Of a stretch of DNA of 64,000 nt, positions 233-62,108 are shown piece after piece. The position numbers were made by a program, and so were the translations under genes. This DNA comes from Octopus sinensis (lineage: Eukaryota): the NCBI RefSeq assembly GCF_006345805.1, contig NW_021825323.1, positions 310,001 to 374,000 of the forward strand. The letters are read 5' to 3'. The notes beneath the pieces were generated by a model that saw nothing but the letters and a program-made list of their open reading frames with translations, was not told where the DNA came from and did not search any database. How positions within the stretch are numbered: position 1 is the stretch's first letter; each line of letters begins with the position of its first letter.

Positions 233-1748
233 CAGTACCGCTCAAATGTTTCGGACCACCCTATTTTTCTCAATTTCCAAGTCAATCCTAAATTATTTTT
301 ATACGGTTCTTTAGAGAAACTTATTAGATAAGCTTAAATACATTTATTCTATTCTAAATTTTTCTTTAAATATTTTTGTTTGGCGCCAATTGAATATAAT
401 TGATTTTTGACTCGATCATATGTTCCGGACCAGTTGCAATCATATGTTTCGAACCAGTTAAATCTCTTTAAATTTAAATAATTTTTGATTCAATTAAAAA
501 CAAAAGACTAATAAATAACAAATGCCGCGTGTTTCACTGGTTGATCGGGTCGCTATCATCACTTTTTTTAAAGATGGAGCTTCACAAAGAGAAATTGCCG
601 AAAAATTAAAAATATCCAAAACTGCTGTTCAAAGAACAATTTCCAGATATTCATCCGTTGGACTATATTCCGACAGACCCAAATCTGGTCGACCGAGATT
701 GTTATCCCCAAGATCTGAACGCAAATTAGTGAGAATTTCGAAAGCAGACCCCACAAAAACGGCAAATTAAATTTGATATGAAATTAAATTCTATTGTAAG
801 CACAAATACAATTAAAAGATGCCTACAAAGAAATAATTTGAATGGGCGAAAGCAATGCCCAAAACCAAGTCTTTCCATATGCCATAAAAAGGCTAGAAAA
901 AATTGGTGCATTGAGAAATTAACTTGGAGCCAAAATGATTGGGGTAAAATTATTTTTAGTGATGAATGCAAAATAAATTTGCATTCAAACACAAAAAATT
1001 ATGTTAGAAGGCCACCAAACTCTAGATTTGACTCAAAATATTGTTTAAAAACACGAAAATTTTCTCCTAGCATTATGGTCTGGGGAGCTATTGCTGCAAA
1101 TGGATGGAGAAACATTGTCTTATGCATTAAAAATGTTGATTCCGCAGAGTATCAGAGAATTATAAATGTTGGACTCGAAAATTTTTATGATGAGACCATG
1201 TATCTCCAGCAAGACGGCGCTCCTTCCCATCGGTCCATGTCGACAATGAATTTTTTTCAAAGGAAACAAATAAAAATCTTAGAAACTTGGCCGAGCCAGT
1301 CACCCGAACTGAATATTATTGAAAATATGTGGTCGGTACTAAAACAAAAACTTTATGATCTGGAACCAAAAGATCTTCCAGAGCTCTGGAATTTGACCAA
1401 AAAAATTTGGTACGAGATTGATAATTCGTACATTGAAAAATTATACAATTCACTTCCAGAGCGAATAAATGCTGTTATAACGAACAACGGAGGAAATATT
1501 AATTATTAACTTTTTATAAGTTTAATAAATTTTCGGTTTTTTTTAAACTGGTCCGGAACATATGATCGAGTATAAAATCGATAATTTTAAAATTGCGCCA
1601 AACATGAATATCTGTCCAAGTTTTTAAAATAGAATAAATGTGTTTAAGCTTATCTAATAAGTTTCTCTAAAGAACCGTATAAAAATAATTTAGGATTGAC
1701 TTGGAAATTGAGAAAAATAGGGTGGTCCGAAACATTTGAGCGGTACTG
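233..1748 (+). mobile_element. Tc1/mariner DNA transposon with long (~200 bp) TIRs and TA target duplication
   Basis: TA|CAGTACCGCTCAAATGTTTCGGACCACCC at 233 and the inverse GGGTGGTCCGAAACATTTGAGCGGTACTG|TA at 1748. Inverted similarity continues inward to CTCGATCATATGTTCCGGACCAGTT (~411-435 vs ~1546-1570). Confidence 0.97.
522..1509 (+). pseudogene. Tc1-family transposase with one frameshift near 770; catalytic spacing DD35E
   Basis: ORF 522-770 has a paired-like HTH and GRPR. ORF 778-1509 has FSDE, QQDGAPSH and WPSQSPELNIIE, with 35 residues between the second D and the E. Confidence 0.93.
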
Positions 1749-17193: not shown

Positions 17194-19090
17194 ATGAATA
17201 TCTACGAACCTCTGTCAAAAGTACTTATTGGGATAAGTTGCACAAATCTCGGCTCATCTGACGCCTTTTCAAAGTCTGATCCACAAATTTTGATAAAAGA
17301 ATTGGACAATAATTCAAACAATTTTATTGAGGTTAAAGTAAATATAATGTAGAAAGGTTGCAAAAACCGAGAAAATTATGAACACATTGAATCCAACATT
17401 TAATGAAATAGAATATGATTTTTATTTTGAACGTATTCAGAAACTAAGATTTGAAATTTACGACATCGATGATCACTTTTCGAGTGCTAAAATCGAAAAA
17501 GGCGATTTTCTCGGTCAGTTCACATCATCCTTGACACAAGTAACAATTTAAACTTTTGCAAAGTTTAGTTGTCAAGATCAGGCCAAACTACTGGTAAACT
17601 AACTGGATTTAATGAAAAACAGAAATTTAAGGGATCAATTCAGGTACATACAAATTTCAATTTTCTATTCCAAAACAATGTTTATTTATAGATAAACGTC
17701 CGTGAAATAAAATCATCAAGAGATGAGTTACAACTAAGTTTTTCTGCTACAAACATTTCGAAAAAAGTAGTTAAAATAATCTCCTTTATTTCCTTAGGGT
17801 ATACTTGGTAAGAAAATTCCCAAAACACGATTAATTCTCCAATCGATAAGTCATAACAAGACATGGAAAACAGTTTTTACTTCCAACACGATCCAACATT
17901 CAATAAATCCAGTCTATGAAGCCTTTAACATAAAAATGTGCAAACTAACAATAAATGAAGGATCCACTGAAGACAAAATTAGAGTTTTTCACTTTTTAAA
18001 TTATCGTAGATATGCATTTGTAAAGCTGAAAAACTGTCAAAAATCTATAGTTTAGCGACATTTCCTATTTCCGATCTGATCGAATCTGCAAATAAAAAAA
18101 CAACGGTAAAATTGCCAAAATCCGTTTTTAGAGATCTTGGATGAGTGAAAATTCATTTGATGACTCATGTTTAATTCTCCTTAATAACTGTGAGATAAGA
18201 CAAGTGTATACTTTTCTCGAACACTTGCAGAGAGGGATGGAACTTAATTTAGTGGTCTGAAACATTATACGAGTCAGCGAATAGACCGCTATTGACTTTA
18301 CGCTGTCAAATGGAGACCCTCGAAAACACGACTCCCTGCATTTTCTTCACAACTATGGCGATGTCATTCGAAATGACTACACACAGGCAATAGAGACTAT
18401 TGGGCGAGTTGTTGAAGAATATGACACGTATTTTATTTCGAGATCACATACTAGTGACAAACTAATTCCTGTCTTTGGATTTGGAGCCAAACTCCCACCA
18501 AACTATTCTTTTGTTAGTCACGATTTTGCGGTCAATTTGAATGTTTCGAATCCGAACTGTTTTGGTAGAGACTTTGTATGAGTTGGTAGGGGTTAATGGG
18601 ATTCTCGAGGCATATAGAGGTCTTATTCCACTAGTGCAACTGTTCGGACCTACAAACTTCAGTCCAGTAATCAGACACGTGATAGAATTAGCTAAGAATT
18701 CTCCTTTATCGGTTATTTGCTTGTTTAAAATAATTTAGCGCTATTTCGTATTGCTTATTTTGACTGATGGGGTCATTAGTGACCTAAGGGAAAGTATAGA
18801 CTCGATAATCGACGCTTCGAGTCTTCCAATATCGATTATAATTGTCGGAATTGGAGACGCAGACTTTAAGGAGATGAATTTTTTGGATAGTGATGACAGA
18901 AAGTTACGGTCACTGGACAGGCAGAGGATTTCAAAAAGAGACATTGTTCAATTTGTTGAATTCAACCAATTTAAAACAGTTTTTTAATCTTTTAGATTTT
19001 TAGAGTTCAATGGAATTGCTGGCAAAGAATGTCTTGGCAGAATTACCTTCTCAAGTCATGGAATTTTATAGTTTGCAGAAAACTAAGTAA
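17194..19090 (+). CDS. CPNE: Copine (C2-C2-vWA), about 12 exons
   Basis: [92 protein letters not shown] and [13 protein letters not shown]. Introns are 25-48 nt, e.g. 17332-17356 and 18428-18454. Confidence 0.95.
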
Positions 19091-23959: not shown

Positions 23960-24760
23960 AGCACGCGCTCAACGCCGCTGGATTCCCTTCGGTCCTGTTG
24001 CCGGTTGGGTTAGACCAGGGGTTCTCAACCTTTTTAGCTCAAGGGCCAAATCGATAATTAAGATTAGCTCCGCGGGCCGCACAAAAAATATTTTATATAT
24101 TTTTATATTTTCCATTTTACTAAATATTGATTCGCATAAATATGTAGATTCATATGCATTGTGTGTTATATTTTTGAATTTGTCTTGAGGAATTAATTCG
24201 TAAAAATTAATAATGGACGCATTTTTGAACAATGCCGCCAGTTCTATATCATGTTGTAAATTAATGAGTTCTAGTTGAAACTTTGCAGGCACATCCTTAA
24301 TTTCCACACTGAATGGAGTTGCGAATATTTTCATTAAAGGAAGGAATTCTTTAAAATTCTAAAAATTAAATTTATATAAATGTACCCCAAAACGTGCTTC
24401 AAATTGATTAATGAAATCACCAATTATGGATATGTTTAACCTTAAGAATGAATAATTAAATCTAAACATTATTAAAAAATTTAAAAAGTTAGTTACTCTA
24501 GAGGGGCCGCAAAAAAAATCCCGGGGGCCGCATTTGAGAACCGCTGGGTTAGACCGTGGTGACGGAAAACGTCTCGATGGGTCCACGCTATTCCCGTTCA
24601 AGGAAGGACTCGCTCTCGTTTGGGACGTTACCTGTGTCGACTCTTTTTACTCGTCATCTCTCATCGACTCTGCCTGGCTCAACCTCCGCACATGCCGAAA
24701 CGAAAAAAATCGCAAAGTACGCCTCATTGGAGAACACCTGCCTTTTCGTCCCCCTGGCTT
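23960..24760 (+). pseudogene. CRE-clade non-LTR RLE fragment split by a hAT MITE
   Basis: RALNAAGFPSVLLPVGLD|RGDGKRLDGSTLFPFKEGLALVWDVTCVDS becomes contiguous once 24016-24554 is removed. Confidence 0.88.
24016..24546 (-). mobile_element. Non-autonomous hAT (SPIN/Charlie-like) element with 8-bp TSD GGTTAGAC
   Basis: Termini CAGGGGTTCTCAAC and TTGAGAACCGCTG; GGTTAGAC at 24008-24015 and 24547-24554; internal transposase remnant FATPFSVEIKDVPAKFQLELINLQ..STYLCESIFS. Confidence 0.96.
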
Positions 24761-25015
24761 TCCAGCCTAGAAACGTGCCCAGGATCAACAGCGGACAGAG
24801 CGAGATTTCTGCGCGAGAATGTTTCTGAGTAGGTGGAGTCCCAAATAAGTGATTTCCCCTGCTCATAAGGAATGATGGTCATGCCGTCTGGGCGTTTGCT
24901 GCCTCCTCTATCCAGCCAAACCGGCTCAAGGATTGACGGGACACCCGCAGAAGCAAGGGCTCTCTGAATAATTGCGTTGAGTTCACAGTGACAAGAGAGA
25001 GCCACGACCGGCACC
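24750..25015 (-). pseudogene. Second CRE-clade RLE fragment, joined convergently to the previous one
   Basis: HCELNAIIQRALASAGVPSILEPVWLDRGGSKRPDGMTIIPYEQGKSLIWDST. Confidence 0.88.
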
Positions 25016-25039
25016 TCAACGGAAAGCGAGAGGGTGGAA

Positions 25040-25352
25040 ACCAGATTCCTTGAGATTTTTTTTGCCTTTTAGTTTTAATTAATTCTTCAAAACGCGGTTT
25101 TTTGTTTGCTAATACAATTCTGAAATTGTTTTCAGAGCTAAAAGAGTTTCTTTTTTTTATATATTTGAGAAATGAAAATCCAGATTCATATAGCCAAGTC
25201 TTTGCAAATGGTACCAGAACTTCCAATGCTTTCTTTGCAAGTTTTGGAAACCCTAATCGCACCAAAAAATCTCCAAAGAATTTGAGTCTTACAAAATTTT
25301 TAAGTAATGTAGGTGCTTGCAATTCAACTGTCTTTAAATTCTTTTCTATCAT
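25040..25352 (-). pseudogene. hAT (Charlie/ZBED5-like) transposase C-terminal dimerisation relic
   Basis: FPKLAKKALEVLVPFAKTWLYESGFS...FRIVLANKKPRFEEL. Confidence 0.8.
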
Positions 25353-26599: not shown

Positions 26600-29300
26600 A
26601 CTAACTAAGTAGACCTTCGGCATCGCTGCCTTTTCAGTCTCCATCACACACACGCTCCCTACACACAACCACAAGTTAAGACTTACCGCCTTACCTGCCA
26701 TCCAGAAATAATCTTCTCTAGGACCTCAGAGAGGCCTTTGAGGGATGATTCCTGGCGTCGGAGAGCTCAGTCCGGAATCCTAAGCCATAGGCTAGCCTTA
26801 TGGCTCGTCTTCTTACTTTTTTAAGCACGTCAACATGCTTATCCCTGTCCTCATAGAGGTACCAAGCGTGGACGCCATAGGTCAAGACGGGTAACACCAT
26901 GGCGTTAAACACGCGGAACCAGGCACCTCTGCTCAAGCGGAAAGCACGCAACGCACCTAATCGCTGCATTGCACGCATTTTCGTACGTGCAATGTGATCA
27001 TCAAACTTACCGGACGGCTTAAAGAGCACGCCCAAATAAGTCATCCGATCAACTCCAGCGATTGCTGACCCGCTCAGCAATAACCTAGGAACAAAATTAG
27101 TGTAACCCCTCGTCCTTTTACAGACTTTAAGGACACTGCACTTGTCCGCGCACATTCTCAGACCCCTACTCCCACACCAGTTTGCAAGTCCATCCACAGC
27201 AACCTGAAGCCTACGACACGCACACTCCGGTTTCATTGAGTGATCCCAGAGGATAATGTCGTCTGCATAGATTACCATTTCAGTACGAGCATTGACTGGC
27301 ATAGGCGCAGTGGCCATAAACACATTGAATAGTGTCGGACTGAGCACAGAGCCCTGAGGGACCCCGCGAAGGACTGTTGCGACTTTCGAAAAGACCCCCT
27401 GATGCCGCACGACCTGTCTGCGAGATTCAAGAAACCCCGACAGCCAGCGCCTTAGACACGGAGAAACCCCGCACGTGGCAAGGGAACTCCGGAGGCCGTC
27501 GTGCCACACCGAGTCGAAGGCCTTTTCAATGTCGAGACTAACTAAAATACCGCATTCCCTTTTCTGGAGGGCGCTCTTCATACTAGACGACACCTTGTGA
27601 AGGCAGTCCCCGCATGAGCGGCCCTCCCTGAAGCCCCATTGGAACTCAGGGAGGGCGTCTGCCACCATCAGCCCCTCCACGAGCCTTTGGTGCATAATTC
27701 TTTCTAGGATTTTAGATATCGCGGGGAGCAAGGAAATGGGCCTATATCCCCCGGGGACATCATGTGGCTTCCCGGGTTTTCCGATAAGGATCACCTCAGC
27801 TACTTTCCACCTGGAAGGAATCATCCCAAGTCGCAAGCTCCCGTTAAATAAAACCTTTAGCGCAGTGATTAACCGCGGCGGGGCCTTCTTAAAGATGGCC
27901 ATCGGGATCCGATCCAAGCCCGCCGCGGTGTTCTTACTTCGGAGATTGCTGCCAGAATCTCCGCTTCAGTAATTTCGCCTGCATCGTCCATTGATATATC
28001 CAGCTGGCAGCGCTTGTCCCACGACAATATCTGCTGGACAGTATCAAAGGACGATTCTCTACGAACTGACTTCCGTCAGTTCCCGAGATGTCATTGAGAT
28101 GGGCTGAAAGTATTTCAACCACCTCAACCGGGTCCGAAGCGAGGGTTCCATCAGAGCGTTTAAGGCGCACTGATTTAGCCCCCCTTCTCCCCGACAGGCT
28201 CTTCAACTGCTTCCAGAAGTCCGGAAAGCGAGGGTCCACCCTTCGGCAGGCCCTCTCCCACCGCGAACTTTCGAGTTCGCGGATTTCTCTTCGGATCTCC
28301 CTCTGAAGCCGGCTAATCCAGCCACGAAACAAACCAACACGGTTCTCCTCGTAAATGCATTTGTCCCGTAGTCTGGATAGCCGGCGCTTGAACCTAATTT
28401 TATTTAAGATCCGGTGAGGGAGCGTGGAATGTGACTGACCCTGCACTGAGTTCTGTTTGAAATTATCTCGCATGTAATCAGTCAGGGCAGCATTGATTCC
28501 ATTATCAAGCGCCTCCAACTCACGTATGTTGGCGCAGGTATTCCCCACCAGAAGTGAGGGCAACCTGCTGGCCATGAAACTCTCCAGGTTAGCCCAGGAA
28601 CCCACCCGGAGGTCAAAGTATCCTGGGACCCTTTGAGGAACTGGCTCACGGAGTTCGTGCAATAGAGGCAGATGGTCGCTCCCAATATCGGGCAATAAAA
28701 TAGTTTTACTAACCCAATTTAGAAGACCGGGACTGACCAGAGCAAGCCCTAGCCAGTCACGTCCTCCCCTCGTGTCGACGTGGTTTGGCTCGCTCGAGGT
28801 CCGGATTTCCAGCCCGAGTTCTTCAATCAGCGTCTTCAGAGCCAAACCATGCGAGTTGGTTACCCTGAAGCCAAGATCTTGATGCTTGGCATTCAGGTCC
28901 CCAACAACCATGGCCTTCGGATGCTTTTCAAAGAACTCCCGTACGTGCCAGGAGCACGCCGTAAAGTTCTTCGAGTACATCCCTCCTAGGTAAAATGTAA
29001 GCTCACCTATGCGAATTCTCACTTGGAGGAATTCACATAGGCTACATAAACATAAACCTGAACTTTGTAGGGGAAGGTACGGCTTGTAGAAGAGGCTAGT
29101 TCCCGTGCCACATATTGACCCGTCTTTCCAGGGTATGTGACGACAGTTGTAGCCATCAACTACGTACGGACCCCCCCTTATCTTCGTTTCGTTGACCACC
29201 AGAATGTCCGCACTCGTGGTGGCCAACATCCTCTGAACGGCGTCCCTTTTCCCTTCCAGGGAACGCGCGTTCACCGATATGATGTTGAGCATCATATTGG
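26600..29300 (-). mobile_element. GC-rich Jockey/I-like LINE with full-length ORF2 (APE plus RT), frameshifted near 27920-28030
   Basis: APE: MMLNIISVNARSL, VNETK, GDLNAKH, SDHLPL. RT: YRPISLLPAISKILE, QWGFREGRS, LDIEKAFDSVWH, GVPQGSVLSP, YADD. The 3' tail motif is at 26611-26640. Confidence 0.96.
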
Positions 29301-29429
29301 TCTTATATAGTAAGAAAAATATTTTTCTTAAAAAATTTAGAGTAATGCAAAAAAAGTATCATCCCGAAATTTTTTGATAGAATTACTAATCATCATTCAA
29401 ATTAAAAAATTAAATATTTTTAAATAATT

Positions 29430-30400
29430 TTTTTTTTTTTTTTTATTTAACTAACAATTAACACCGAAAATAGTTAAGTTCCAGCGGCGAGGACGCAGTG
29501 TGCGTTGCCCCGAACAATGGCCAGGCCGATGCGCTGGCGGAACCAGAGGCTCTCTCTCGAGTCCTTGAGCCTTCTCCCGATGGACTGCCCGACCTCTTTG
29601 AGGAACGAGTCAGTCTCCTTTCCTGCAACTCCAGCGGTCTCCAGAGCGATTGCCGTAACGCGGTAGCGGTCCGCGAGCGAAGAATATTTATGTATTTTGA
29701 TCTTTTCGGCGTGGTTTGCAGCCGAACAAGGGTTTGCCGCAGAAGAATGGATCCTCGATTTCGAAAAGGTATCCACAACGGTGACATCCCATACAAGGGC
29801 CTCCCCGACGAGTACGGGAATATTGTCATCCCGTCAGGCCTTTTGCCATCTCCCCGATCGAGTCCGACCGGTTCGAGGAGGCACGAATGGCCCGCCATTT
29901 CGAGACCGGCCTTTACGATTTCATTGAGGGCCTTGTGTCTGTGTTCCCTGCCTGCGCTCCTCTTGCAAGAAAGTGGGTGCAGTCCCTTTTCGTCAACGTC
30001 CTCACCGCATCTGCAGCGGTGTTTTGCACAAACATCCAGCCCGAGACGGTGAGCCACTCCGATGCGTATGGCAGCATCGTCTAGCCACGTCCCGATGCTG
30101 GAGAGAGGAAGAGCATTCAGCCAGCTGCCAGAGTGAGGGGCGGATGCCGCACGAAGGCATGCCAGGCGGTGTTGATCAAGGGTTGCCGAGAGCACAGACA
30201 CACGCGCTCGGCATGCGATAGAGTCCCAGGCACGTTGGGAGGAGAAATCTTCGGGCCTCTCAGAAAAGGAGCGATCCCAGGTAGTGAGCCCATCCGAAAA
30301 AGCACCATCCAGGCAAGATCCGAAAGAGTTGAGTAGGATCTCAGAGGCCAGGTTGTTGCACATCGAAAGGGAGGATAGATATGCCGGAAGTGCCACATCG
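29430..30400 (-). mobile_element. CRE-clade non-LTR element 3' portion with poly(A) tail
   Basis: HSGSWLNALP, CAKHRCRCG, HPLSCKRSAGREHRHKALNE, KRPDGMTIFP and RIGLAIVRGNA; T-run at 29429-29444. Confidence 0.93.
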
Positions 30401-35241: not shown

Positions 35242-36654
35242 TTAATTCAAACTAACAATGGAGTGCGATGGCGGATTATTCAAGATAAATATTAGCCCGG
35301 TTATAGAAGATAGCCCAGCAAATACGAAATATATTATTCCTGAGTAAAATTGGATAGTGGCTGAGTATAAAATCATTATTAACGGATTCACAATCAACAG
35401 GGTGAAATTCTTAATTGAAAATAGAAACGCAAACAATCTGCCTAACAATAAATAGAATAAAAAACCATTCTCCTCGGTCTTGACCAGATTAACTAGAATA
35501 GTCTTACAATTAGCCATATTTAGGGAAGAACTCGCAACCATAAATGTCCCTATCAATATGATGAAAAATACCAACCAATGAAGAGCAGGTAATACGAACG
35601 AGCAAAGCCGAATGTAACAAATCCAGAAGTGGATACCAGTGCAGTCACGAAAGATACTTTATTCAATTCAATTATTTTTTTATGTAGAATAAGACCTCCA
35701 ATCAGACCGAAAACAGCAGTTCCAATCCCAACAATAAGAATGAGAAAGGAATATTGTAAGTTTTTCATTAGAAAGGGGTCACCACTGACGTACAGGTACG
35801 AGGTTATGAAAAAGCCTGAGATAGTTAGAACTGACACAACCATCGTATATAAGGCTGATGACAAGGTATAGAACAGTGTACTTAAATAGCCATTTCCTGT
35901 TTGGATTCATAGAAGACAACAAAGAGGCCATCATTCTCAGAATTTTACGGAAAGTTTACCTTAATTTATAAACCAAATTGTTGCATGATTTGTTTGACTC
36001 GTATGAGTCGGAAAGTGCAAACATAGGATAAACGACGCACACCGAAGAGAGAGATATAATGATAATAAGACAAACACTGTAATATCTCAAGTCCACTATA
36101 AATCCACCCAGTATGCTCCCACAGATGAAACCCAGAGTAGTAAATGTCTCAGCCAATATTATTCTCAAAGGAATATGGTCTGGTTGGGATTGTTTTACGA
36201 TATATGAGAAACAGCACAACAGGTAAACGATTTCTCCTCCAAAAAAAGACTTGGCAAAGAATATGACATACAAATAGACAAATTTCAATTCGAAGGTGAC
36301 ATATGCAATTATACAAAGTATGCCACACGCGTAATTGAACATTGAGAGAACCATAGCTCGTAAAAACTTTCCATTGTCAATGTCCATTCCAAAATACAGA
36401 CTTTGAAACAGAGGCATTAACATTGATAGAAATCCAATAACAGCCGATATTCTGCTTGCTTCCTTTTGAACATGGTTTCTCTTGAAAATAGTTTTATTAT
36501 CAAACATTTCAGTCGACCGCAAAAATGAGCAGTTCAAATATATTTCTTTACAAGTTTCTTCATATATCAATGATCTCATGAATATTATTTCGAGAGCCCA
36601 CATGAACATCGAGATGAAAAGTAATGGTTCTGCAAACTTGAATAAGAATTTCAT
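35242..36654 (-). CDS. MFS transporter, SLC46 (PCFT-like) family, multi-exon; 3' end approximate
   Basis: AEPLLF..IYEETCKEIYLNC..VQKEAS, FFGG..CFSYIV..LRIILAE..GFICGSILGG; many hydrophobic helices. Confidence 0.7.
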
Positions 36655-38298: not shown

Positions 38299-41200
38299 TC
38301 AAATGCTGTAAATCTGTGATAAAATAGATGCAGTATCATCGGCCAACACGAGCATTGCTTGATCGACCAGTCCCTCCTTAACTGCAACGTCTGTTTCTTC
38401 ATAATTGCGCCACCGTCTTGCTTCCTGGAAAAGTTCCGAAATCAAAATTTGTTCGACATGATCGATTCGCCTGCCGGTTTTTAGTTTGATTGGAATAAAT
38501 TCGGCAAACACAGTCTCAACCACTGCTGTTTCCACAGCATTTTCAAACTCCTCAATTGTAGAAGGTAGACGACACTCCCGGGAACTGCGACGACCACCGA
38601 GCGAACTGAGTACTCGCTTTCTCGGCAGCCAAGACCAATTCAACTTTTTACTAACTTGTGCCGTTTTAATATAGTCATTAATGACCATAATAACCTACGA
38701 TTAACAAATACTCAACGCACAATGTCGTCCACCAATCTTTCACTGCTGTCATTCCAAGTGAGAGGCAGAGATTCCAGTTCGTGATCTGCGGCGACTAATA
38801 ACGGCCAGGCATGTCGCGCAAATGTTCTACATCGGGAAACAACCATTTCTCTCTCGACGAAAGGGAGAGTGGGCGTTGGAGAGACCGATTCATCAATGAG
38901 TGTTATTTCAATCTCGTCGGGAGTACACATTTCATGTTCTTTAACTGAAGGTATGTCCGTGGGGGGAGTGCCAAGGTGTTCTGATATTGAATCCTTAGAG
39001 TTCTCAGATGAAAGCTCGTCCAGTTCTATTTTGAGAGAGATTTCAGAATCATTTTGAGATAACTCCTCAACACTCAAACAACGAGTTTCTAATTCATTCG
39101 TAGAGAAGGAATGGATGGTTTCCTCTTTGACATATGAGTCACAAATAGGCGGATTCTCGCCAGTTTCTATTTTTTCATCATTCGGATGTAATTCATCGGT
39201 AGAAGTTAACTCGTTTTGGATATGTAGAAATATCTACAATGAGTAACGCTAAAATGCCTTGGGAATTGAACTGGTAGAAATGAATTGATCCAGAATGACC
39301 GTCATTTCTTCATAACGACAGTTTCTTTTCAAGAATTCCATCCGTTTTTCAATAAGCAAAACTGAATAATCGTCTAATTCTTGTTTCTCTGACATCATTT
39401 TCCTCTCAAGACGAGATATCCAATCGATTGCGTCACTTTCGCGAGTACAGTTTGTCATATTTTGCTGCAACCAAGCAATCATCAGTTTGTGATAGTTCTG
39501 CTGCAAGAAATTGAGACTCTTTAATGCATTTTCTATATCAGTTTGTGTTGGCTTATCATCGGGGAATTGTACCTGGCAACTGGCATCTTTCTTTTTAGTT
39601 TCTATTTCAGCATTTCCCTTCGATTTTGATAGATTTCCCAATTCTGCCAATGATTTTTCAAGAGAGTTTAAATGTGATAATTCCACTGAAAATTTTGCAG
39701 CCAGACTAGTGGGGGAATATCTTAACGATTCCGTTAAGGATTCTCGGGTGTTGACTTGTTCTGTGAATGTATAACTGTCTTCCAATGATTCTTCTGTAAG
39801 CTCCTGTGAACGAGAAACATCTGATTCTTTTAGCGATTCGTCTTGCAAAACTTCGGGGAAATGGTTTAATTCTTGTATTGGAATATTTTGAGTATGATCT
39901 GATTGCAAAGATGAACAGCTATCCAACGGTGCAATTGATAGGTGAGGTTTATTTAAATATGTGGGATCAGGACTCTTCTTGGAAGTCAGTCGATTTGAAA
40001 TAATATCCAAAACGTTGTAATTATCTCTCAAGGCTCCTGGAAACGGGAGGTTTCCTTTACAGCTTCTCCTGTTTTCATGAAACTGCTTGTATTTAAACAA
40101 CAAAATATACAGAAATGCGAGAATCATTAGTGGTAGAAAGAAATGAATAAGGCTTGGCCTCCACAGTGAAGACTCTCTTCGGATGTCGTAATCCCGCTGT
40201 TGTTGATATCGCTTTGTTATCAGATGTTCTTGGGAGAATACTTTCAACCGCTTGAAATTGACAGATATTTTCAGGCTGAGATAGGCCAGTATCCACAGGT
40301 TGAGAGTGGTCATTATTAAATACAGTACGAGAAAGGCCAGTATCCACAGGTTGAGAGTGGTCGTTATTAAATACAGTACGAGAAAGGCCAGTATCCACAG
40401 GTTGAGAGTGGTCGTTATTAAATACAGTCCGAGAAAGGCCAGTATCCACTGGTTGAAAGTGGTCGTTATTAAATACAGTCCGAGAAAGGCCAGTATCCAC
40501 AGGTTGAAAGTGCTCATTATTGAATACAGTCTGAGGAAGGCCAGTATCCACAGGTTGAAAGTGGTCGTTATCCAGAGGTTGAGAGTGAACAGCATCCAAC
40601 ATAGGTTTTAATTGTTTCGCTGCTTGTTCAATTCCTTGTCGAATCAACCCGGCTTGTCTAATCAGTTCAGCCATTTTTTGATTTGAGTTATTTTTATTCA
40701 ATGTGCTGTAGGGCTGCGCAGACCTGACGGGGGAAATGTTAACAGTCAACTGATCAGTATTTGACGACGTGTCACTCGATGTAATGCAATCGTAAGGACG
40801 GTCAGGAAAGGCAGTGCGCAAGTATCCTTTATCTTTATGGATATTTTTGTATGCTCCCTTTTTAACTGGCTTTTCCTTTGACATTATTTTCCTAGCATTT
40901 TCGCACTGAACTTGATGGAGTTTGTAAAGTCGTCGTTTGATTTCCTCTCGATTCTGCATTATAACCAATTTATACCTTTATTTCTTGAAATTTTGCATTC
41001 TTAGCTTGTTCCTTTCTTTCTGAGCGCTTTCTCTGCATGTAATCGACCACTTCTTTAACACAATAATTACGACCTCTCCCATGCACACTCTTTGTCTCCT
41101 TCTTGACTGTGGGACTATCGAATATATTTATAATATTCACCGAGTCCTCACAACATCCTCATTTGACCAATGTGACAACTTCCCCACAGGTTTCAAAAAT

Positions 41201-50330: not shown

Positions 50331-50922
50331 GTCCTAGAATTCAATCCTATGTCAAATTTCAATTTATCATTTTTCATGTGATTTTAGTTCTAATAACGTG
50401 ATTTGGTACTTATTACACCACATAAACAATTTCAAAAAAGCAATTATCAATTAAGGCGGCAAATTATTTTCAATATTTTTTCAGTAATTAATGGAAATAA
50501 TATTCATACAAATAATATTAAGCTATTAATACAAATAATCAGTTTCCATTGCGATCTTAGGTGGCAACATCTCTATCATTAGTAGTTTCAGATCAAAACT
50601 AAATTTTATTTTAAATATAACCCTTTTTAATAATCATTATCAACATACAAAAACAAATAATTAATAGCAGTCTTCTATCAAAAATTCAAAAAACAGTTGG
50701 AAATCTCTCAGTCTCTCCCAAGTCTCTCAGTTATCTATAAAATGAGTAATATTGTCACAGATTTCGTATCACATAGTTAGCTGTGAACATTTTTTGTTCC
50801 ACTAACTAATAAGAGACTTCAAATATTACAGATGTTATAGACTGATCAAATATGCGAGACTGGTAATTAAAACCTTTTTTGATTGCATTTTTAATTTGAG
50901 TTAATTTTACCTCACTTTAGAC

Positions 50923-52923
50923 CAGGGGTTCTCAACCTTTTTAGCTCAAGGGCCAAATCGATAATTAAGATTAGCTTCGCGGGCCCCACAAAAAATTTTT
51001 TTATATATTTTCCAAGCCGGTAACTCGCTTGCAATCCGAAGTGCAGCCACTGCTGATGCGTAATGAGTTTTTGGACTCTTTTTTCTTTTTTTAATTTCCA
51101 TTTCCTTTATAAAGAAATAAAAGCTAAAAAATCTACAAAAGGCGTTGTAACTAAAAAGAAAGTACAGTAAAACCTCTCGAATCCGCCGATTTTTTGGTCG
51201 GTCCCAAAATCGGCGGATTCGAGAGGCAATTTAAATAAAATTTTATAGTTGAAACATGAACTTACAATATAGATTAAATATTTCTTTTTATATACAAATG
51301 ACTGAATACACAAATTATTTATATTCAAATTATCAGAAATTTTATAACATTTCCTCAATTCGCATAATATTTTAGAGATCATCTATCTATTGCAAGTCTT
51401 ATTGGAATGGGTGTAGGTAACATATTTTCCAATGTTGAAATTTTTAGAACATCTTGGACTTTTGAATCTTTCTATCATTACAGGCCTTCTTTTATCGGAA
51501 CCAGAACAATTTGCGCATAATAGTAAAGAAAATCGATCCTTCGATAACTTTATTCCAGGCCTTGATTTAGTGCACACATGTTTAGAAGAAATCGCCTTGT
51601 AAAAAACACCACTTTCATCTGAATTATGGACATTGTCCAATCCATATTGTTCAGTTTTTAAACTGATTGTTTCATTAAAATCAGCAATAGATTTTTCATC
51701 ATGATTTACTGATCCAGTGTCTCCATGAAATTTTCTGACTTGATACCATTTTGTAATTTAGACTTTTCTAGCCACCCACGACTTGCTTTAAATTCTGGAA
51801 AATTTTTTAAAATTTTAAGAGCTTTTGCAATTAACATCGAATCTGATAGAATTGCTCCACTAGATTCCATTAAGTCAATCCATGTTATCATCGCTACATC
51901 AATTTCATTAAATTTGAGTTTTGGAATTCTCATTATGTTTAATTTTTTGATATCAGTCCTATTCAAAAGGTCCGATTTTGATTTAAGGTCGTTTATAGTT
52001 TTCGGAAAAATTTTCTTTTTTAATCGTGAAGAAAAATCCTGGAAATTTGAGGTGCAGAAACAAATGGGTTGTCAGAAATATAACGTAGTATAGAAATTTT
52101 TTCGTTGATAGAAAGTCTAACACAACGACGCATCACAAAAATACAATTTAACGTGTAATGAGAATTTTAAAATGTTAATAAAAAATTATTTTTCATAATA
52201 CTTGAGGAGCGGATTCGAGAAACAAGCGGATTCAAGAATCATTCATAGGAAATTTCAAATTTTTGATTAAAACAAGCGGATTCGAGAAGCGGCGGATTCG
52301 AGAAGCAGCGGATTCGAGAGGTTTCACTGTATTATTTGTTTATTAAGTTTTTGAAATCCGGAATAAGTAAAATTGAAAAAGTTCGTAAAAGCTGACGTAG
52401 AATTTTTTGAATTTGTCTTGAGGAATTAATTCGTAAAAATTAATAATGGACGCATTTTTGAACAATGCTGCCAGATCTATATCATGTTGTAAATTAATGA
52501 GTTCTAGTTGAAACTTTGCAGGCGCATCCTTAATTTCCACGCTGAATGGAGTTGCAAATATTTTCATTAAAGGAAAGAATTGTCGTCAACTATGACTACA
52601 ATTGGGGATACGCATGGAAAGAGACACTTCGGTGCCTTGTTTTTATCTCCCCGTTGATGATTTCTTCCTTGTTTTTCTTTTTCTTTTCGGTCAATAAATA
52701 CTATTCTATTCTAAAGGAAAGAATTCGTTAAAATTCTAAAAATTAAATGTATATAAATGTACCCCAAAACGTGCTTCAAATTGATTAATTAAATCACCAA
52801 TTATGGATATGTTTAACCTTAAGAATAAATAATTAAATTTTAACATTATTAAAAAATTAAAAAAGTTAGTTACTCTAAAGGGGCCGCAAAAAAAATCCTG
52901 GGGGCCGCATTTGAGAACCGCTG
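50923..52923 (-). mobile_element. Second copy of the non-autonomous hAT element, TSD CTTTAGAC, carrying a nested Tigger
   Basis: Same termini as 24016-24546; CTTTAGAC at 50915-50922 and 52924-52931. Confidence 0.96.
51165..52329 (-). mobile_element. pogo/Tigger element with transposase pseudogene, TA-flanked
   Basis: TIR CAGT(A/G)AAACCTCTCGAATCCGC; FKASRGWLEK (CENP-B HTH), NSDESGVFY and KDRFSLLLCANCSGSDKRRP (DDE_1). Confidence 0.95.
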
Positions 52924-53104
52924 CTTTAGACTTTTCTTTCGTTACTGATTGTGGTGATAAAACTGTTTTCCGATCTCAATTTTTTTTATATATTAATAAA
53001 TTTTTTGAAATTGTTAAAAAAGAATCCGAAAGTATGACTCACCAAAAATTTTAAAAAATTTGAATAGTATTTTTAAATTACAAGTTGCCACAGTTACTTC
53101 GTCC

Positions 53105-58950: not shown

Positions 58951-59244
58951 TTTACTAACTTTATTTTGCAGTGTGCTTATTAACAAAGAAACTAATTAAC
59001 TAAGTAATTTTTCTAACTAAGTCCAGAGCCTTTAAAGTGAGCAGAATGTGGCACTCCACGCACCTCCTCCCCTTCTTCCTTTTCTTCTCTGGCACTGTAG
59101 ACCTTCGAGAAGGTGCAGTCCAGCGCCTCTCGCTGACTAAACGTCAGGAAAGGGCTGGATCGGCGAGCATCAAACGAGACACTCTCCAAAGTTCTCTTAA
59201 GAACAGTTGACTGTATATAAGCCTGTAGACTCTACAGTGTAGAC

Positions 59245-61562
59245 CAGTGATTCTTAACGGGGGCGCTGGCGCCCCCCTGGGGGCGCTGGAACATATTAGG
59301 GGGGCGCTGGAATTTTAATTTTTTTTAATTATTATAAATATTTTATTAGTTTTTGTAAATCATTATCACGTGCTTTTCTATTAATTCTAAATTCAAATTG
59401 TCTTGTGTGTACGTAAAAAAATTATTCACTGATAATATTTATAAATATTTGTTAATTGTATTTAATATTTTAGAACTTTTTAATAAATATTTTAATTATA
59501 TTTTATAGATGTCTGATAAAAAAGTAAAACGACGTATATATTCGGATGAATACCTAAAGTTTGGAGTGATACCCTACGACCATAACAATTCACTTCCAAT
59601 GTGTCTTATGTGTAAAAAGGTCTTTACAAATGAAGGAATGAAGCCTTCAAGAATGCTAAATCATCTTAAGATTTGTCATCCTGACAAACTTGATGCGGAT
59701 ATCAATTATTTTTCTAATCTGAAATATAATTATGAAAATCGTCTTATGATTAATCAACTATTTACAAAAAATTCGAAGATGCTTGAAAAAGGCCTATTAG
59801 CATCATACAAAATATCGCAATTGATAGCGAAATCAGGAAAACCTCATACTATTGGAGAGTCATTAATATTACCAGCTATCAAAGAAGTGTTAAATTCAAT
59901 GGTTGATTGTGATTCTGAACAAATAATTTCATCAATTCCTTTGAGTAATAGTTCTGTTTCTTCCAGAATTGATGAAATGGCATTTGATATCGAAGAAACC
60001 CTATGTGCATTTTTAAGAACAACAAAATTTTCAATTCAGATTGATGAATCGACATTCAACGATAGTGTTGCACTTTTATTAGTTTACGTACGTTATATTA
60101 ATCAAAATGATGTAATTCAAGAAGAATTTTTATTTTCTGAACACCTTGAACTCGATACAAGAGGATTAACAATTTTCAAAACTGTTGAACAATATTTTTT
60201 GAAACATGAAATACCCCTTAGCAATATTTTTGCTTGTTCAACAGATGGGGCACCTGCGATGGTTGGAGTTCATCGTGGGTTTTTGGCATATATGAAGGAA
60301 AAAGTACCGAATATTTTTACAATCCATTGCGTCATTCACAGACAGCATTTAGCTGCGAAAAATTTAAGTGAGAGGCTGAATGAATCACTAAATGTTGTCA
60401 TATGTGCAATAAATCGTATTAAAATGCACCCATTGAATTCGAGAATATTTCGACATATTTGTGAACAAAACGATGAGCATTATGAACGACTTCTTTTGCA
60501 TACCCATGTTAGATGGCTTTCAAAAGGAAACTGTTTGTGTCGATTTTTTGAATTGTATGATTCAATCTTAGAATTTTGTCAGTTACATGAGCAGAGAATT
60601 TTTAGGTAATTATTCCTTAATCATTTTAGTAAGTTGATTTTATTGAAAGCTGATATAGCTTATCTAGCTGATATTTTTTATAAAATCAACCAAGTAAATA
60701 TTAGCTTGCAAGGAAACAATATCAATTTAATAAATGTAAAAGGAATTATTATGCCTTTTATTGAAAAATTACAACTTTATGAAAACAATATTAAGAAAAA
60801 GATTTTTATTAATTTTCCAAATCTACAAAAATTTGGGGTTATTTTTTGTAATAATATTTATTAGGTCGAAAAATTAACGGATTCTGACTGTGAATGCTTT
60901 TGCTTGCATCTAAAAATGTTAAAAGATGACATGAAAATCCGCTTTGAAGATTTAGAAAATTTAAAATTTTTTGATTGGTATATAAATCCATTTGAAACTG
61001 AAAACGTTAATTTATCTCAAGAAATAACAGAAAATTTATTAAATCTGAAATATGACTTTGAAGCTAAAGTCATTTTCAACAAATATGGATATCAACAATT
61101 CTGGGTTACTCATAGAAAAAAATATCCTTTATTGTGGAATGAAATTGAAACACTTATAATAGCATTTCCTTCAACATATCTAGTTGAAAGAGGATTTAGT
61201 GCAGTCTCTAATATTTTGACCAAAAAAAGAAATAAATTACAAATTGTGAATAGAGGAGATTTGAGACTAAGTCTGTCGACTATTGAAGCTGACATAAAAC
61301 GATTGACAAATTCCCATCAAGCACAAGGCAGTCACTAAAATTTTTTTATATAAAAAAGTTTGGTTTGTGAATACCCTTTTTAATTCTAAAAAAATAATAA
61401 GTAATATTCGAAAATATTAAAATGAAACAATTGGCGAAAAAATTGCCAAATAAATCTATAATTGAAAAAAAATAAATTAAATAATAGGGGGGCGCTGAAA
61501 TTTTGAAGCTTCGAAATTGTGTCAAAAGGGGGCGCTGACTTAAAAAAGGTTAAGAACCACTG
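59245..61562 (+). mobile_element. Complete hAT (Buster/Charlie) DNA transposon with 8-bp TSD GTGTAGAC
   Basis: TIRs CAGTGATTCTTAAC and GTTAAGAACCACTG; GTGTAGAC at 59237-59244 and 61563-61570; GGGGCGCTG subterminal repeats at both ends. Confidence 0.97.
59509..61338 (+). CDS. hAT transposase (ZBED5/SCAND3-like), ~592 aa after removing introns 60606-60629 and 60838-60864
   Basis: BED finger CLMC..HLKICH, QIDEST (D), STDGAPAM (D), HCVIH, VRWLS and STYLVERGFS (E). The only stops lie inside 24-nt and 27-nt GT-AG segments. Confidence 0.9.
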
Positions 61563-62108
61563 GTGTAGACTCTACACTGTAGAGACTTATCTACACCCAG
61601 CTGTCTTTAGCACCGTTTGTGTCTTATTAACAATAATAACTTAAATTTTTTGGTTAATTTTTCTAGTTCTTAGGGTAATAAAGTTATTTTTTGGTTAAAT
61701 TTTTATATTTTTAGCTTAAAAAATGCCCTACGTATTATAATTAATTTGAAGTTGGAAAATTGAATTTTTTGGTGTTAAATGAGGCTTTTCCTTTTTATGC
61801 CCCGCAACGACTGAGTGTTGTATTTATGTGGGCCCCTTATTTGTTTCATGACATGACTATCTTGGCTTGTAACATTTTACAGAGCATATAAGCAAGTTTT
61901 ATGGATTGCTATCCATATGGGTATATGGCCATTAGCAATTTACTTTAAATTATAAGTAAAAAAGCTAATCAATGAGAGTTTTAGTCTGCTACAATATTTT
62001 AATTAATTCGTCAATCATTATTTAATTCTAACAAATTCTGTTCAACATTTTCCCATACTCAGTGACGTTTGATTCTGCTCAGATATTAAAATAAAAGTTT
62101 CTTATCTA

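What the first reader, a model, noticed from the sequence alone, without database searches (positions are those of the whole stretch)
59245..61562. Apparently intact hAT transposon whose transposase carries host-style micro-introns that mask stop codons
Seen: the transposase looks broken into three ORFs. Both stops fall inside tiny GT..AG segments (60606-60629, 24 nt; 60838-60864, 27 nt). Removing them gives one ~592-aa frame with BED finger, D-D-E triad, CxxH and RW motifs. TIRs and the 8-bp TSD are intact, and the ATG directly follows TTTTATAG, a possible 5'-UTR acceptor. Both introns are multiples of 3, so the unspliced RNA terminates early. Inference: the element uses the host's minimal-intron splicing, and splicing could act as an on/off switch for transposase, as the regulated intron does for the Drosophila P element. 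ORF-based tools would wrongly call it dead.
Basis: partly seen in the sequence, partly recalled or inferred. Interest (0 to 1): 0.72.

Follow-up and report, generated by a model that had tools for sequence, protein, structure and literature searches.

The report
Buster hAT transposon with two micro-introns
A complete cut-and-paste (hAT/Buster) transposon sits here, and its transposase gene is interrupted by two tiny 24- and 27-base introns of the same kind as the host animal's own genes, so it is very probably intact rather than dead; whether splicing regulates it is untested.

Summary
The element spans 59245-61562 and has 14-bp TIRs (13/14 matching) and a perfect 8-bp TSD, GTGTAGAC. One reading frame is broken only by TAA at 60607 and TAG at 60862, and each stop lies inside a GT..AG segment (24 nt and 27 nt).

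Against 120 homologous Buster transposases, the only two query-specific insertions in 609 residues are these two segments. Removing them restores the modal spacing at site 1 and an in-range spacing at site 2.

Host genes in the same window have the same kind of intron. I found 17 host introns of 22-31 nt (plus one of 48 nt), with a GTA..TAG consensus. They include in-frame, stop-bearing introns that are absent from copine homologues.

Random 24/27-nt insertions have GT..AG ends only 0.2% of the time.

The spliced 592-aa protein keeps the BED CCHH, D-D-E, CxxH and RW residues. Its predicted structure matches the Hermes transposase.

The host is an animal with ultra-short introns, probably a dicyemid and possibly a myxobolid myxozoan.

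Three things are not supported by any evidence: the P-element-like splicing switch, the 5'-UTR acceptor, and current activity. No RNA data and no other copies could be reached.

This is a new variant of known kinds, of moderate interest.

The parts
59237..59244 (.). Left copy of the 8-bp target-site duplication, GTGTAGAC
   Evidence: Identical to 61563-61570. TA at positions 4-5 fits the Buster nnnTAnnn consensus (PMC3499496).
59245..59258 (+). Left terminal inverted repeat, CAGTGATTCTTAAC
   Evidence: Matches the right end at 13/14 positions.
59259..59312 (+). Three subterminal GGGGGCGCTG(G) repeats at 59259, 59279 and 59300. Inferred to be transposase-binding sites.
   Evidence: The window has 5 copies, all inside the element ends, against 0.01 expected by chance. 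The function is inferred by analogy with subterminal repeats of other hAT elements.
59509..60605 (+). Transposase exon 1. ATG at 59509; contains the BED-type CCHH finger, the first two catalytic Asp, CxxH and RW.
   Evidence: Homologue N-termini align with this ATG.
60606..60629 (+). Micro-intron 1: 24 nt, phase 2, GTAATTATTCCTTAATCATTTTAG. Contains the in-frame TAA at 60607-60609.
   Evidence: 0/120 homologues have residues in its 8 codon columns. Spacing between anchors is 41 unspliced and 33 spliced, and 33 is the homologue mode. Chosen by all 16 spliced alignments. Its length and its GTA..TAG ends match the host introns.
60630..60837 (+). Transposase exon 2, part of the all-alpha insertion domain
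60838..60864 (+). Micro-intron 2: 27 nt, phase 0, GTTATTTTTTGTAATAATATTTATTAG. Its last three bases are the in-frame TAG.
   Evidence: It is the second of only two query-specific runs in the whole protein. The linker is 30 residues unspliced, above the homologue range of 16-29; spliced it is 21. Chosen by all 16 spliced alignments. It falls in a predicted loop, residues 435-440 of the model.
60865..61338 (+). Transposase exon 3, with the catalytic Glu and the hAT C-terminal dimerisation motif (STYLVERGFS). The TAA stop follows ..HQAQGSH.
   Evidence: The C-terminus coincides with that of the homologues. Pfam Dimer_Tnp_hAT gives E=0.0025, below the curated cutoff.
61449..61476 (+). Two AATAAA motifs downstream of the stop; possible polyadenylation signals
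   Evidence: This is a sequence match only.
61488..61537 (+). Two subterminal GGGGGCGCTG repeats at 61488 and 61528
61549..61562 (-). Right terminal inverted repeat (reverse complement CAGTGGTTCTTAAC)
61563..61570 (.). Right copy of the target-site duplication, GTGTAGAC

Best explanation
Window 59245-61562 is a structurally complete autonomous DNA transposon of the hAT superfamily, Buster clade. It carries TIRs, an 8-bp TSD, subterminal repeats and one transposase gene.

The gene has three exons separated by two spliceosomal GT-AG introns of 24 and 27 nt. These belong to the same ultra-short size and sequence class as the introns of the host's own genes. The host's normal splicing machinery is expected to remove them from the pre-mRNA. 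That would give a 592-aa transposase with all catalytic and DNA-binding residues.

The closest relatives are uninterrupted ORFs at both positions, so the two introns were gained in this element's lineage, inside a host lineage with ultra-short introns (probably a dicyemid, possibly a myxobolid myxozoan). DNA transposons copy themselves as DNA, so the introns are carried along at each transposition.

Both introns are multiples of 3 with an in-frame stop. An unspliced message therefore terminates early. I read this as the ordinary safeguard against intron retention, not as a dedicated switch.

Shown here: the anatomy, the insertion status relative to homologues, the match to host introns, and the fold. 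Inferred: actual splicing, expression and mobility.
For: 1. Anatomy and coordinates.
2. Family: 808 homologues, the best being ZBED5/8/9 and 'SCAN domain-containing protein 3-like' Buster transposases at 46-57% identity over the full length. The AlphaFold model has pLDDT 85.8, and its best structural matches are Hermes transposase entries 4d1q, 2bw3 and 8sjd, with E about 1e-9 and probability 1.00. The TSD fits nnnTAnnn.
3. The two stop-bearing segments are the only two query-specific insertions in 609 residues against 120 homologues, and the query has no deletions. Their removal restores the modal length at site 1 and an in-range length at site 2.
4. My spliced aligner, run with 16 different homologues, always picks exactly 60606-60629 and 60838-60864 and aligns from the first to the last residue. 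The intronless relative L001 yields no intron.
5. Host introns in the same window: 10-11 in the copine gene supported by 8 homologues, plus 7 from ORF joins. Lengths are 22-31 nt (one of 48), median 26, with A at +3 in 10/17 and T at -3 in 14/17. They include in-frame stop-bearing introns of 30 and 27 nt that are absent from copine homologues.
6. Only 0.22% of random 24/27-nt insertions have GT..AG ends, so two by chance is about 5e-6.
7. Literature: animals with introns under 30 nt are known only among dicyemids and myxobolid myxozoans, with the 5' splice site reduced to GTa (PMC13644364; PMC6543705).
Against: - No transcript evidence of any kind could be obtained.
- Only one copy is visible, so neither conservation of the introns among copies nor recent mobility can be shown.
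- Site 2 lies in a length-variable linker, so its insertion status is weaker than that of site 1.
- GT..AG bracketing by itself is expected for about 19% of random nonsense mutations.
- The host species is not identified. Its proteins are absent from the searched collections.
- Pfam hits to the hAT dimerisation domain and DUF4371 are below the curated cutoffs in the local library.
Confidence: 0.8

Rival explanations
1. Dead copy. The two segments are ordinary small insertion mutations (replication slippage, filler DNA or repair scars) that happen to carry stops, and the element no longer encodes a transposase.
For: - Only one copy is seen, and no RNA is available.
- A 6-nt direct repeat (TTTTAG) precedes and ends segment 1. 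That is compatible with an insertion created during repair.
- 19% of nonsense mutations can be bracketed by a 3n GT..AG.
Against: - Both insertions have exact GT..AG ends, at 0.22% each by chance.
- Both are in the host's intron size class, AT-rich, and have the host's preferred T at -3.
- Apart from these two segments, the 592 codons carry no stop, frameshift or deletion relative to 120 homologues, and every invariant residue is kept. That is unexpected for a decaying copy in 70% A+T DNA.
- The segments are not duplications of flanking sequence.
Confidence: 0.08
2. Regulated-intron switch. One or both micro-introns are retained in some cell types or life stages. That would shut off the transposase or yield a 366-aa BED-containing truncated repressor, as with intron 3 of the Drosophila P element.
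For: - Unspliced RNA would terminate after residue 366. That product keeps the BED finger and lacks the catalytic Glu.
- Both introns are 3n with in-frame stops.
- Very short introns can be inefficiently spliced in other lineages (microsporidia, cited in PMC13644364).
Against: - Nothing distinguishes these introns from constitutive host introns. The host copine gene has in-frame stop-bearing introns of 30 and 27 nt too.
- 3n plus an in-frame stop is the generic NMD-compatible state expected under selection against translatable retained introns (PMC11334263).
- With 2 introns, both being 3n has a chance probability of about 1/9, and a stop within 8-9 codons of 80-90% A+T sequence is roughly even odds (my estimate).
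- No regulatory motif was identified.
Confidence: 0.1
3. Variant genetic code. TAA and TAG are sense codons in the host, as in many ciliates with about 25-nt introns, so the frame is simply open.
For: Ultra-short introns and A+T-rich DNA are typical of ciliates such as Paramecium (PMC11334263).
Against: - The transposase ends at a TAA exactly where 120 homologues end.
- Only two in-frame TAA/TAG occur in 1.8 kb of 70% A+T coding sequence, and both lie in the insertions.
- Host genes such as copine read as standard-code exons, with TAA/TAG/TGA confined to introns.
- The copine gene's best hits are all animal proteins.
Confidence: 0.01

Closest known systems
Buster-clade hAT transposons (TcBuster, AeBuster, AnBuster, SPIN; domesticated ZBED5/8/9, SCAND3)
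   Same: - 8-bp TSD with TA at positions 4-5.
- 14-16-bp TIRs starting with CAG.
- Total size of roughly 2.3-3 kb.
- A transposase of about 590-680 aa with a BED finger, a DDE RNase-H-like core with an all-alpha insertion domain, and a C-terminal hAT domain.
- 46-57% identity to database members.
   Different: The described active Buster elements carry one uninterrupted ORF (PMC12637253). This one has two introns of 24 and 27 nt. It is only 57% identical to its nearest database relative.
hAT and other DNA transposons whose transposase genes contain host-type spliceosomal introns: BuT2 of Drosophila buzzatii (five exons; PMC3942097 abstract); Ac, Tol2 and the P element (own knowledge); CACTA transposases (PMC4158355)
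   Same: The transposase is encoded by several exons. The introns travel with the DNA copy. Expression depends on the host spliceosome.
   Different: Those introns are of ordinary length, tens to hundreds of nt. Here they are 24 and 27 nt, at the lower limit known for animals, in frame, and recognisable only by comparison with homologues.
Ultra-short spliceosomal introns of Dicyemida and myxobolid Myxozoa (PMC13644364, PMC6543705, PMC6736024)
   Same: Length class (medians of 22-27 nt in those taxa; 26 for host genes in this window), GT-AG ends, a 5' signal reduced to about GTA, and A+T richness.
   Different: The papers I read describe the class in host genes, and for RPS13 at positions conserved across metazoans (PMC13644364). 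Here two such introns sit in a mobile element whose relatives lack them. This implies de novo gain at ultra-short size.
Drosophila P element intron 3 (tissue-specific retention giving a truncated repressor) - own knowledge
   Same: An unspliced message would yield an N-terminal, DNA-binding, catalytically dead fragment.
   Different: There is no evidence here for regulated retention, splicing silencers or a repressor product. This is a resemblance of possibility only.

Membership tests
hAT superfamily | 8-bp target-site duplication | tested here: met
   GTGTAGAC at 59237-44 and 61563-70, 8/8; it does not extend to 9.
hAT superfamily | Short terminal inverted repeats (about 10-25 bp) beginning with CAG | tested here: met
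   CAGTGATTCTTAAC and CAGTGGTTCTTAAC, 13/14 matching.
hAT superfamily | DDE transposase with an RNase-H-like core interrupted by an all-alpha insertion domain (Hermes-type fold) | tested here: met
   AlphaFold2 model with pLDDT 85.8 and pTM 0.75. The top six PDB matches are Hermes transposase chains, with E from 1e-9 to 6e-8, probability 1.00 and TM about 0.5. D179, D246 and E560 are conserved.
hAT superfamily | C-terminal hAT dimerisation domain (Pfam PF05699) | tested here: inconclusive
   The Pfam hit has E=0.0025 and 18 bits, below the 21.4-bit cutoff. However, the motif FPSTYLVERGFS...R..L is conserved with all homologues.
hAT superfamily | N-terminal BED-type zinc finger | tested here: inconclusive
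   C32-x2-C35...H52-x4-H57 are invariant in 28 sequences. No Pfam zf-BED hit was found, only a weak zf-C2H2_12 hit.
Buster clade of hAT | TSD consensus nnnTAnnn | tested here: met
   GTGTAGAC has T at position 4 and A at position 5. Consensus from PMC3499496.
Buster clade of hAT | Transposase groups with ZBED5/8/9, SCAND3 and TcBuster-type proteins | tested here: met
   The best named hits are 'SCAN domain-containing protein 3-like', ZBED5-like and ZBED8, with precomputed Pfam families FAM200-ZBED5_RNase-like and FAM200-GTF2IRD2-like. No explicit phylogeny was built.
Buster clade of hAT | Single uninterrupted transposase ORF, as in the described active members | tested here: not met
   There are two in-frame stops inside inserts of 24 and 27 nt. 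This is a descriptive, not a definitional, feature of the clade.
U2-type spliceosomal ultra-short introns of the host | GT...AG boundaries whose removal restores a continuous frame | tested here: met
U2-type spliceosomal ultra-short introns of the host | Length and end composition within the host's own intron distribution | tested here: met
   Host introns: n=17, 22-31 nt (plus one of 48), median 26, +3 A in 10/17, -3 T in 14/17. The element's introns are 24 and 27 nt, GTA../GTT.. and ..TAG.
U2-type spliceosomal ultra-short introns of the host | Segment absent from homologous proteins (insertion, not substitution) | tested here: met
   Site 1: 0/120 homologues have residues there. Site 2: 0-11 of 120 homologues have a residue in the eight query-specific columns, residues 446-453 (34 of 120 at residue 445, 59 at 444), in a length-variable linker, and the unspliced length exceeds all 120. 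These are the only two such runs in the protein.
U2-type spliceosomal ultra-short introns of the host | Removal from RNA in vivo | not testable with these tools
   No transcriptome of the host was reachable. Exact-protein and junction-pattern searches returned nothing.
P-element-type regulated intron | Cell-type-specific retention producing a truncated repressor | not testable with these tools
   Only the theoretical 366-aa product can be stated.

The most novel reading that the evidence does not exclude
The two introns (and a third in a sister family in the same window) arose de novo at ultra-short size. They arose inside a mobile element that entered, or has long resided in, a host lineage with ultra-short introns. 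If so, such introns are still being created, rather than being only shrunken ancestral introns. In addition, the element may benefit from them in one of two ways. Host-like splicing may license its expression or let it escape surveillance of intronless foreign transcripts. Alternatively, stage-specific retention may yield a BED-only repressor, giving P-element-like self-regulation.
Probability: 0.12. Interest if true: 0.75.

Novelty: new variant of a known kind. Interest (0 to 1): 0.48.

Why it matters
1. Annotation. In animals with introns under 30 nt, ORF- or stop-codon-based pipelines will score intact DNA transposons as dead and will under-count autonomous elements. Here two 'nonsense mutations' are really introns.

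2. Intron evolution. The nearest relatives of this transposase are uninterrupted ORFs, so these introns are dated gains. They show that ultra-short introns can arise at that size in a lineage where they were mostly described as miniaturised ancestral introns. A transposon family gives many independently ageing copies in which to study the gain.

3. Transposon biology. Expression of the element depends on the host's unusual minimal-intron splicing. That dependence could limit its horizontal spread and would have to be allowed for (by using a cDNA) if the transposase were ever tested as a tool.

Tried and rejected
- **Variant (ciliate) genetic code.** Rejected. The C-terminal TAA coincides with the homologue ends, the only in-frame TAA/TAG lie in the inserts, and host exons read in the standard code.
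- **Plain nonsense mutations.** Rejected by the alignment with 120 homologues.
- **Introns derived from duplication of flanking exon sequence.** No similarity above shuffled controls (p=0.65-0.86).
- **5'-UTR micro-intron ending at TTTTATAG|ATG.** No GT lies within 50 nt. The possible lengths are 51 nt, 58 nt and from 96 nt upward. Left as untestable.
- **Identifying the host.**
  - An MFS-like gene gave no homologues at all.
  - Copine is only about 39% identical to any animal copine and does not clearly favour spiralians or cnidarians.
  - Rfam found no RNA gene.
  - Exact-protein look-ups of four window ORFs or relatives found nothing from the same organism.
  - G+C of about 36% and LINE-rich, repeat-rich DNA fit Dicyema japonicum (36.7% GC, 49% repeats) better than the described myxobolids. 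This is not proof.
- **Other copies or spliced transcripts.** A junction pattern allowing 0-24 nt between the exons found nothing in JGI metagenome contigs. The nearest relative, P0001/L001 (SRR30685181), has no similar termini.
- **PDB by sequence.** No hit with the protein or with the family profile. Only the fold comparison found Hermes.
- **Spliced alignment of the second hAT family at 24.0-24.8 kb against Buster proteins.** It is too divergent (scores 42-64) to confirm its putative intron by homology.
- **The first genome-wide GT..AG ORF-joining scan.** Far too noisy to use (351 candidates on one strand). Replaced by homology-guided spliced alignment.
Full report
**1. The observation**

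The region was read directly and every coordinate was re-derived by script.

- The element runs from 59245 to 61562.
- Its ends are CAGTGATTCTTAAC and, in reverse complement, CAGTGGTTCTTAAC. They match at 13 of 14 positions.
- The element is flanked by a perfect 8-bp duplication, GTGTAGAC. The duplication cannot be extended to a ninth base.
- Five copies of GGGGGCGCTG lie just inside the two ends and nowhere else in the 64-kb window, against 0.01 expected.
Translating 59509-61338 straight through gives 609 codons with only two stops, TAA at 60607 and TAG at 60862.
- Each stop lies in a GT..AG segment: 60606-60629 (24 nt) and 60838-60864 (27 nt). Deleting both leaves 592 codons ending in TAA.

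**2. What family the element belongs to**

- A search of 5.8 billion proteins found 808 relatives. The best are full-length (99-100% coverage) at 46-57% identity. Where named, they are 'SCAN domain-containing protein 3-like', 'ZBED5-like', 'ZBED8' or 'zinc finger MYM-type protein 6-like'. This is the Buster branch of hAT transposases and its domesticated derivatives.
- The alignment keeps the CCHH finger (C32, C35, H52, H57), D179, D246, C274-x-x-H277, R335-W336 and E560.
- Local Pfam hits are only sub-threshold, and sequence searches of the PDB find nothing.
- An AlphaFold2 model of the spliced protein is confident (pLDDT 85.8, pTM 0.75). Its six best structural matches are all Hermes transposase chains, with E from 1e-9 to 6e-8 and probability 1.00.
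- The TSD has TA at positions 4-5, the Buster consensus nnnTAnnn (PMC3499496).
- Size, TIR length and protein length match described active Buster elements. Those, however, carry one uninterrupted ORF (PMC12637253).

**3. Nonsense mutations or introns?**

I aligned the read-through translation with 120 homologues.

- In the whole 609-residue protein there are exactly two runs where the query has residues and fewer than 10% of homologues do. They are residues 365-372 and 446-453, and each contains one of the two stops.
- There is no query deletion anywhere.
- Site 1: no homologue (0/120) has a residue in the eight columns. The distance between flanking invariant anchors is 41 in the query, against 31-35 in 119 of the 120 homologues (mode 33 in 95 of them; one outlier at 128). 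Removing the 24 nt gives 33.
- Site 2: the segment lies in a length-variable linker. The unspliced length (30) exceeds all 120 homologues (16-29). The spliced length is 21.

I also wrote a protein-to-DNA aligner that may open GT..AG introns of 15-150 nt.

- With each of 16 different homologues, it chose exactly 60606-60629 (phase 2) and 60838-60864 (phase 0). It aligned from the first Met to the last residue each time.
- On the closest relative's own DNA (L001, one continuous 598-codon ORF), it opened no intron.

**4. Is it host-style?**

The window is repeat-rich animal DNA, with several LINE reverse-transcriptase and endonuclease ORFs and Tc1/mariner remnants. It also carries host genes:

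- a copine gene (17.2-19.1 kb, + strand);
- an NmrA-like gene (21.6-22.4 kb, + strand);
- an Oxa1-like gene (44.3-45.1 kb, + strand);
- a BRCT-repeat gene (47.7-50.0 kb, - strand);
- an unnamed gene (38.3-41.6 kb, - strand).

Evidence from these genes:

- tblastn of mollusc copines against the window shows in-frame blocks that contain stops and are missing from the homologues..LNLVV*NIIRVSE*TAIDF.. and ..[15 protein letters not shown]...
- The spliced aligner, run with eight copine homologues, agrees on introns of 25, 29, 48, 31, 26, 30, 27, 25, 27 and 25 nt. One further junction, near 17984-18055, is placed inconsistently.
- Removing them yields a stop-free copine translation.
- Adding seven ORF-joining introns from two other genes gives 17 host introns of 22-31 nt plus one of 48 nt, with a median of 26. 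All are GT..AG, with A at +3 in 10/17 and T at -3 in 14/17, and they are 60-84% A+T.
- The transposon's introns (24 nt, GTA...TAG; 27 nt, GTT...TAG; 79% and 89% A+T) fall inside this class.
- The copine intron at 18712-18738 (GTTATTTGCTTGTTTAAAATAATTTAG) is the same length and has the same architecture as transposon intron 2.

**5. Chance**

- GT..AG bracketing alone is not strong. 19% of simulated single-base nonsense mutations in this ORF can be hidden in a 3n GT..AG of 18-33 nt. But that model predicts a deletion relative to homologues after 'splicing', which is the opposite of what is seen.
- Under the relevant null, a random 24/27-nt insertion of matching composition, GT..AG ends occur in 0.22% of trials. 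Two such events would occur with probability of about 5e-6.
- The rest of the ORF is unblemished in 70% A+T DNA.

I therefore put 0.8 on two genuine spliceosomal micro-introns. The residue covers the absence of RNA evidence.

**6. Origin of the introns**

- The nearest relatives in the database are contiguous ORFs called on short contigs. This was verified for P0001/L001. They are therefore intronless at these positions, and the introns are gains in this element's lineage.
- The introns are not duplications of neighbouring exon sequence.
- Intron 1 is preceded by, and ends in, the same hexamer, TTTTAG. This is compatible with insertion during repair, but it is a single case.

**7. The host**

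- Introns under 30 nt are reported in animals only for dicyemids and myxobolid myxozoans. Medians are 27 nt in Dicyema sp., 27 nt in Henneguya and 22 nt in Thelohanellus and Myxobolus rasmusseni. The 5' signal is reduced to GTa (PMC13644364; PMC6543705).
- The window's G+C (about 36%) and its LINE-rich, repeat-rich content resemble Dicyema japonicum (36.7% GC, 49% repeats, many LINE ORF2 copies; PMC6736024). They resemble Henneguya (29% GC) or the LINE-poor Myxobolus honghuensis less.
- The copine gene is equidistant (about 39%) from all animal copines. An MFS-like gene has no detectable relatives.
- I call the host 'probably a dicyemid'. It is not identified.

**8. How the element most likely works**

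- Shown: a complete Buster-type element whose gene needs removal of two ultra-short introns to encode a transposase.
- Inferred: the host spliceosome removes them as it does the host's own introns. The 592-aa protein binds the subterminal GGGGGCGCTG repeats and TIRs, and it cuts and pastes the element with 8-bp duplications at nnnTAnnn sites. The introns are copied with the DNA.
- If unspliced, the message stops after 366 residues. A length that is a multiple of 3 plus an in-frame stop is what selection against translatable retained introns produces in short-intron genomes generally (PMC11334263). It also occurs in the host copine gene, so it does not by itself indicate a switch.
- The P-element analogy remains an untested possibility (0.1).
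- The proposed 5'-UTR acceptor has no donor at micro-intron distance.

**9. Comparison with what is known, and novelty**

- Transposase genes with introns are familiar: BuT2 with five exons (PMC3942097), CACTA elements (PMC4158355), and Ac, Tol2 and P (own knowledge).
- Ultra-short animal introns are also known.
- Transposon-derived genes have been used as zero-intron baselines to test intron gain in mammals (PMC3369469).
- What is new here is the combination. A Buster element, elsewhere a single ORF, has gained introns at the extreme lower size limit. They are invisible except by homology and so mimic nonsense mutations.

I rate this a new variant of known kinds with interest 0.48. It has practical importance for TE annotation in such genomes, and it is a usable handle on de novo gain of ultra-short introns.

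**10. Limits**

- No RNA data, no further copies and no host identification were obtainable with the collections at hand.
- Activity, expression and regulation are all inferences.

Noticed in passing
window 24010-24554 and 50917-51011 + 52404-52581 + 52712-52931: Two copies (94.5-96.6% identical; the second is interrupted by insertions) of the 3' part of a second, related hAT family. Its end, CAGGGGTTCTCAACCTTTTTAGC, resembles this element's right end. Read on the minus strand, the frame ..INQFEARFG[VHLYKFNF*]NFKEFLPLMKIFATPF..STYLCESIFSKM.. contains a 27-nt, phase-0 GT..AG block ending in an in-frame TAG (24359-24385). Both copies have it, with one substitution. It looks like a third micro-intron in a transposase, at a different position. 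Homology support is weak because the family is too divergent.
   Followed up: partly
window 59237-59244, 24008-24015, 50915-50922: The 8 bases next to the TIR in all three Buster-like insertions end in TAGAC (GTGTAGAC, GGTTAGAC, CTTTAGAC). This suggests a target preference narrower than nnnTAnnn.
   Followed up: no
window 59224-59244 joined to 61571-61590 (empty site): The element inserted into a short tandem array, about 2.5 copies, of a 14-nt near-palindromic unit TGTAGACTCTACA(G/C). This explains the 20-nt displaced direct repeat and the 17-nt inverted repeat across the element.
   Followed up: partly
window 17209-19069 (+): Host copine gene with 10-11 introns of 25-31 nt (one of 48) in 1.9 kb. 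The intron at 18428-18454 is 27 nt, in frame and without a stop, so it would be translatable if retained. It could instead be a real 9-residue insertion in the protein.
   Followed up: partly
window 26718-30396 (-): A LINE with long endonuclease (453 aa) and reverse-transcriptase (399 aa) ORFs sits in a 50% G+C block inside about 36% G+C DNA. It may be a young element. As expected for an element that copies itself through RNA, it has no micro-introns.
   Followed up: no
window 40250-40570 (-): The unnamed host gene contains six tandem copies of a 17-residue unit (HFQPVDTGLSRTVFNND). A long overlapping ORF on the same strand is created by the repeat.
   Followed up: no
window 35242-36654 (-): A three-ORF gene has a weak MFS_1 Pfam hit (E=8e-6, below cutoff) and no detectable homologue among 5.8 billion proteins. 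It is either a very fast-evolving or a lineage-specific transporter-like gene.
   Followed up: partly
window 480-1509 (+): In this Tc1/mariner copy, the HTH part and the DDE_3 part are in different frames. The natural continuation ..ADPTKTAN / QIKFDM.. indicates a frameshift mutation rather than an intron. The only GT..AG candidates are 16-19 nt.
   Followed up: partly
window 24879-25352 (-): Another hAT C-terminal fragment (..FPKLAKKALEVLVPFAKTWLYESGFSFLKYIKKRN..) lies next to the family-2 copy. hAT remnants are frequent in this window.
   Followed up: no
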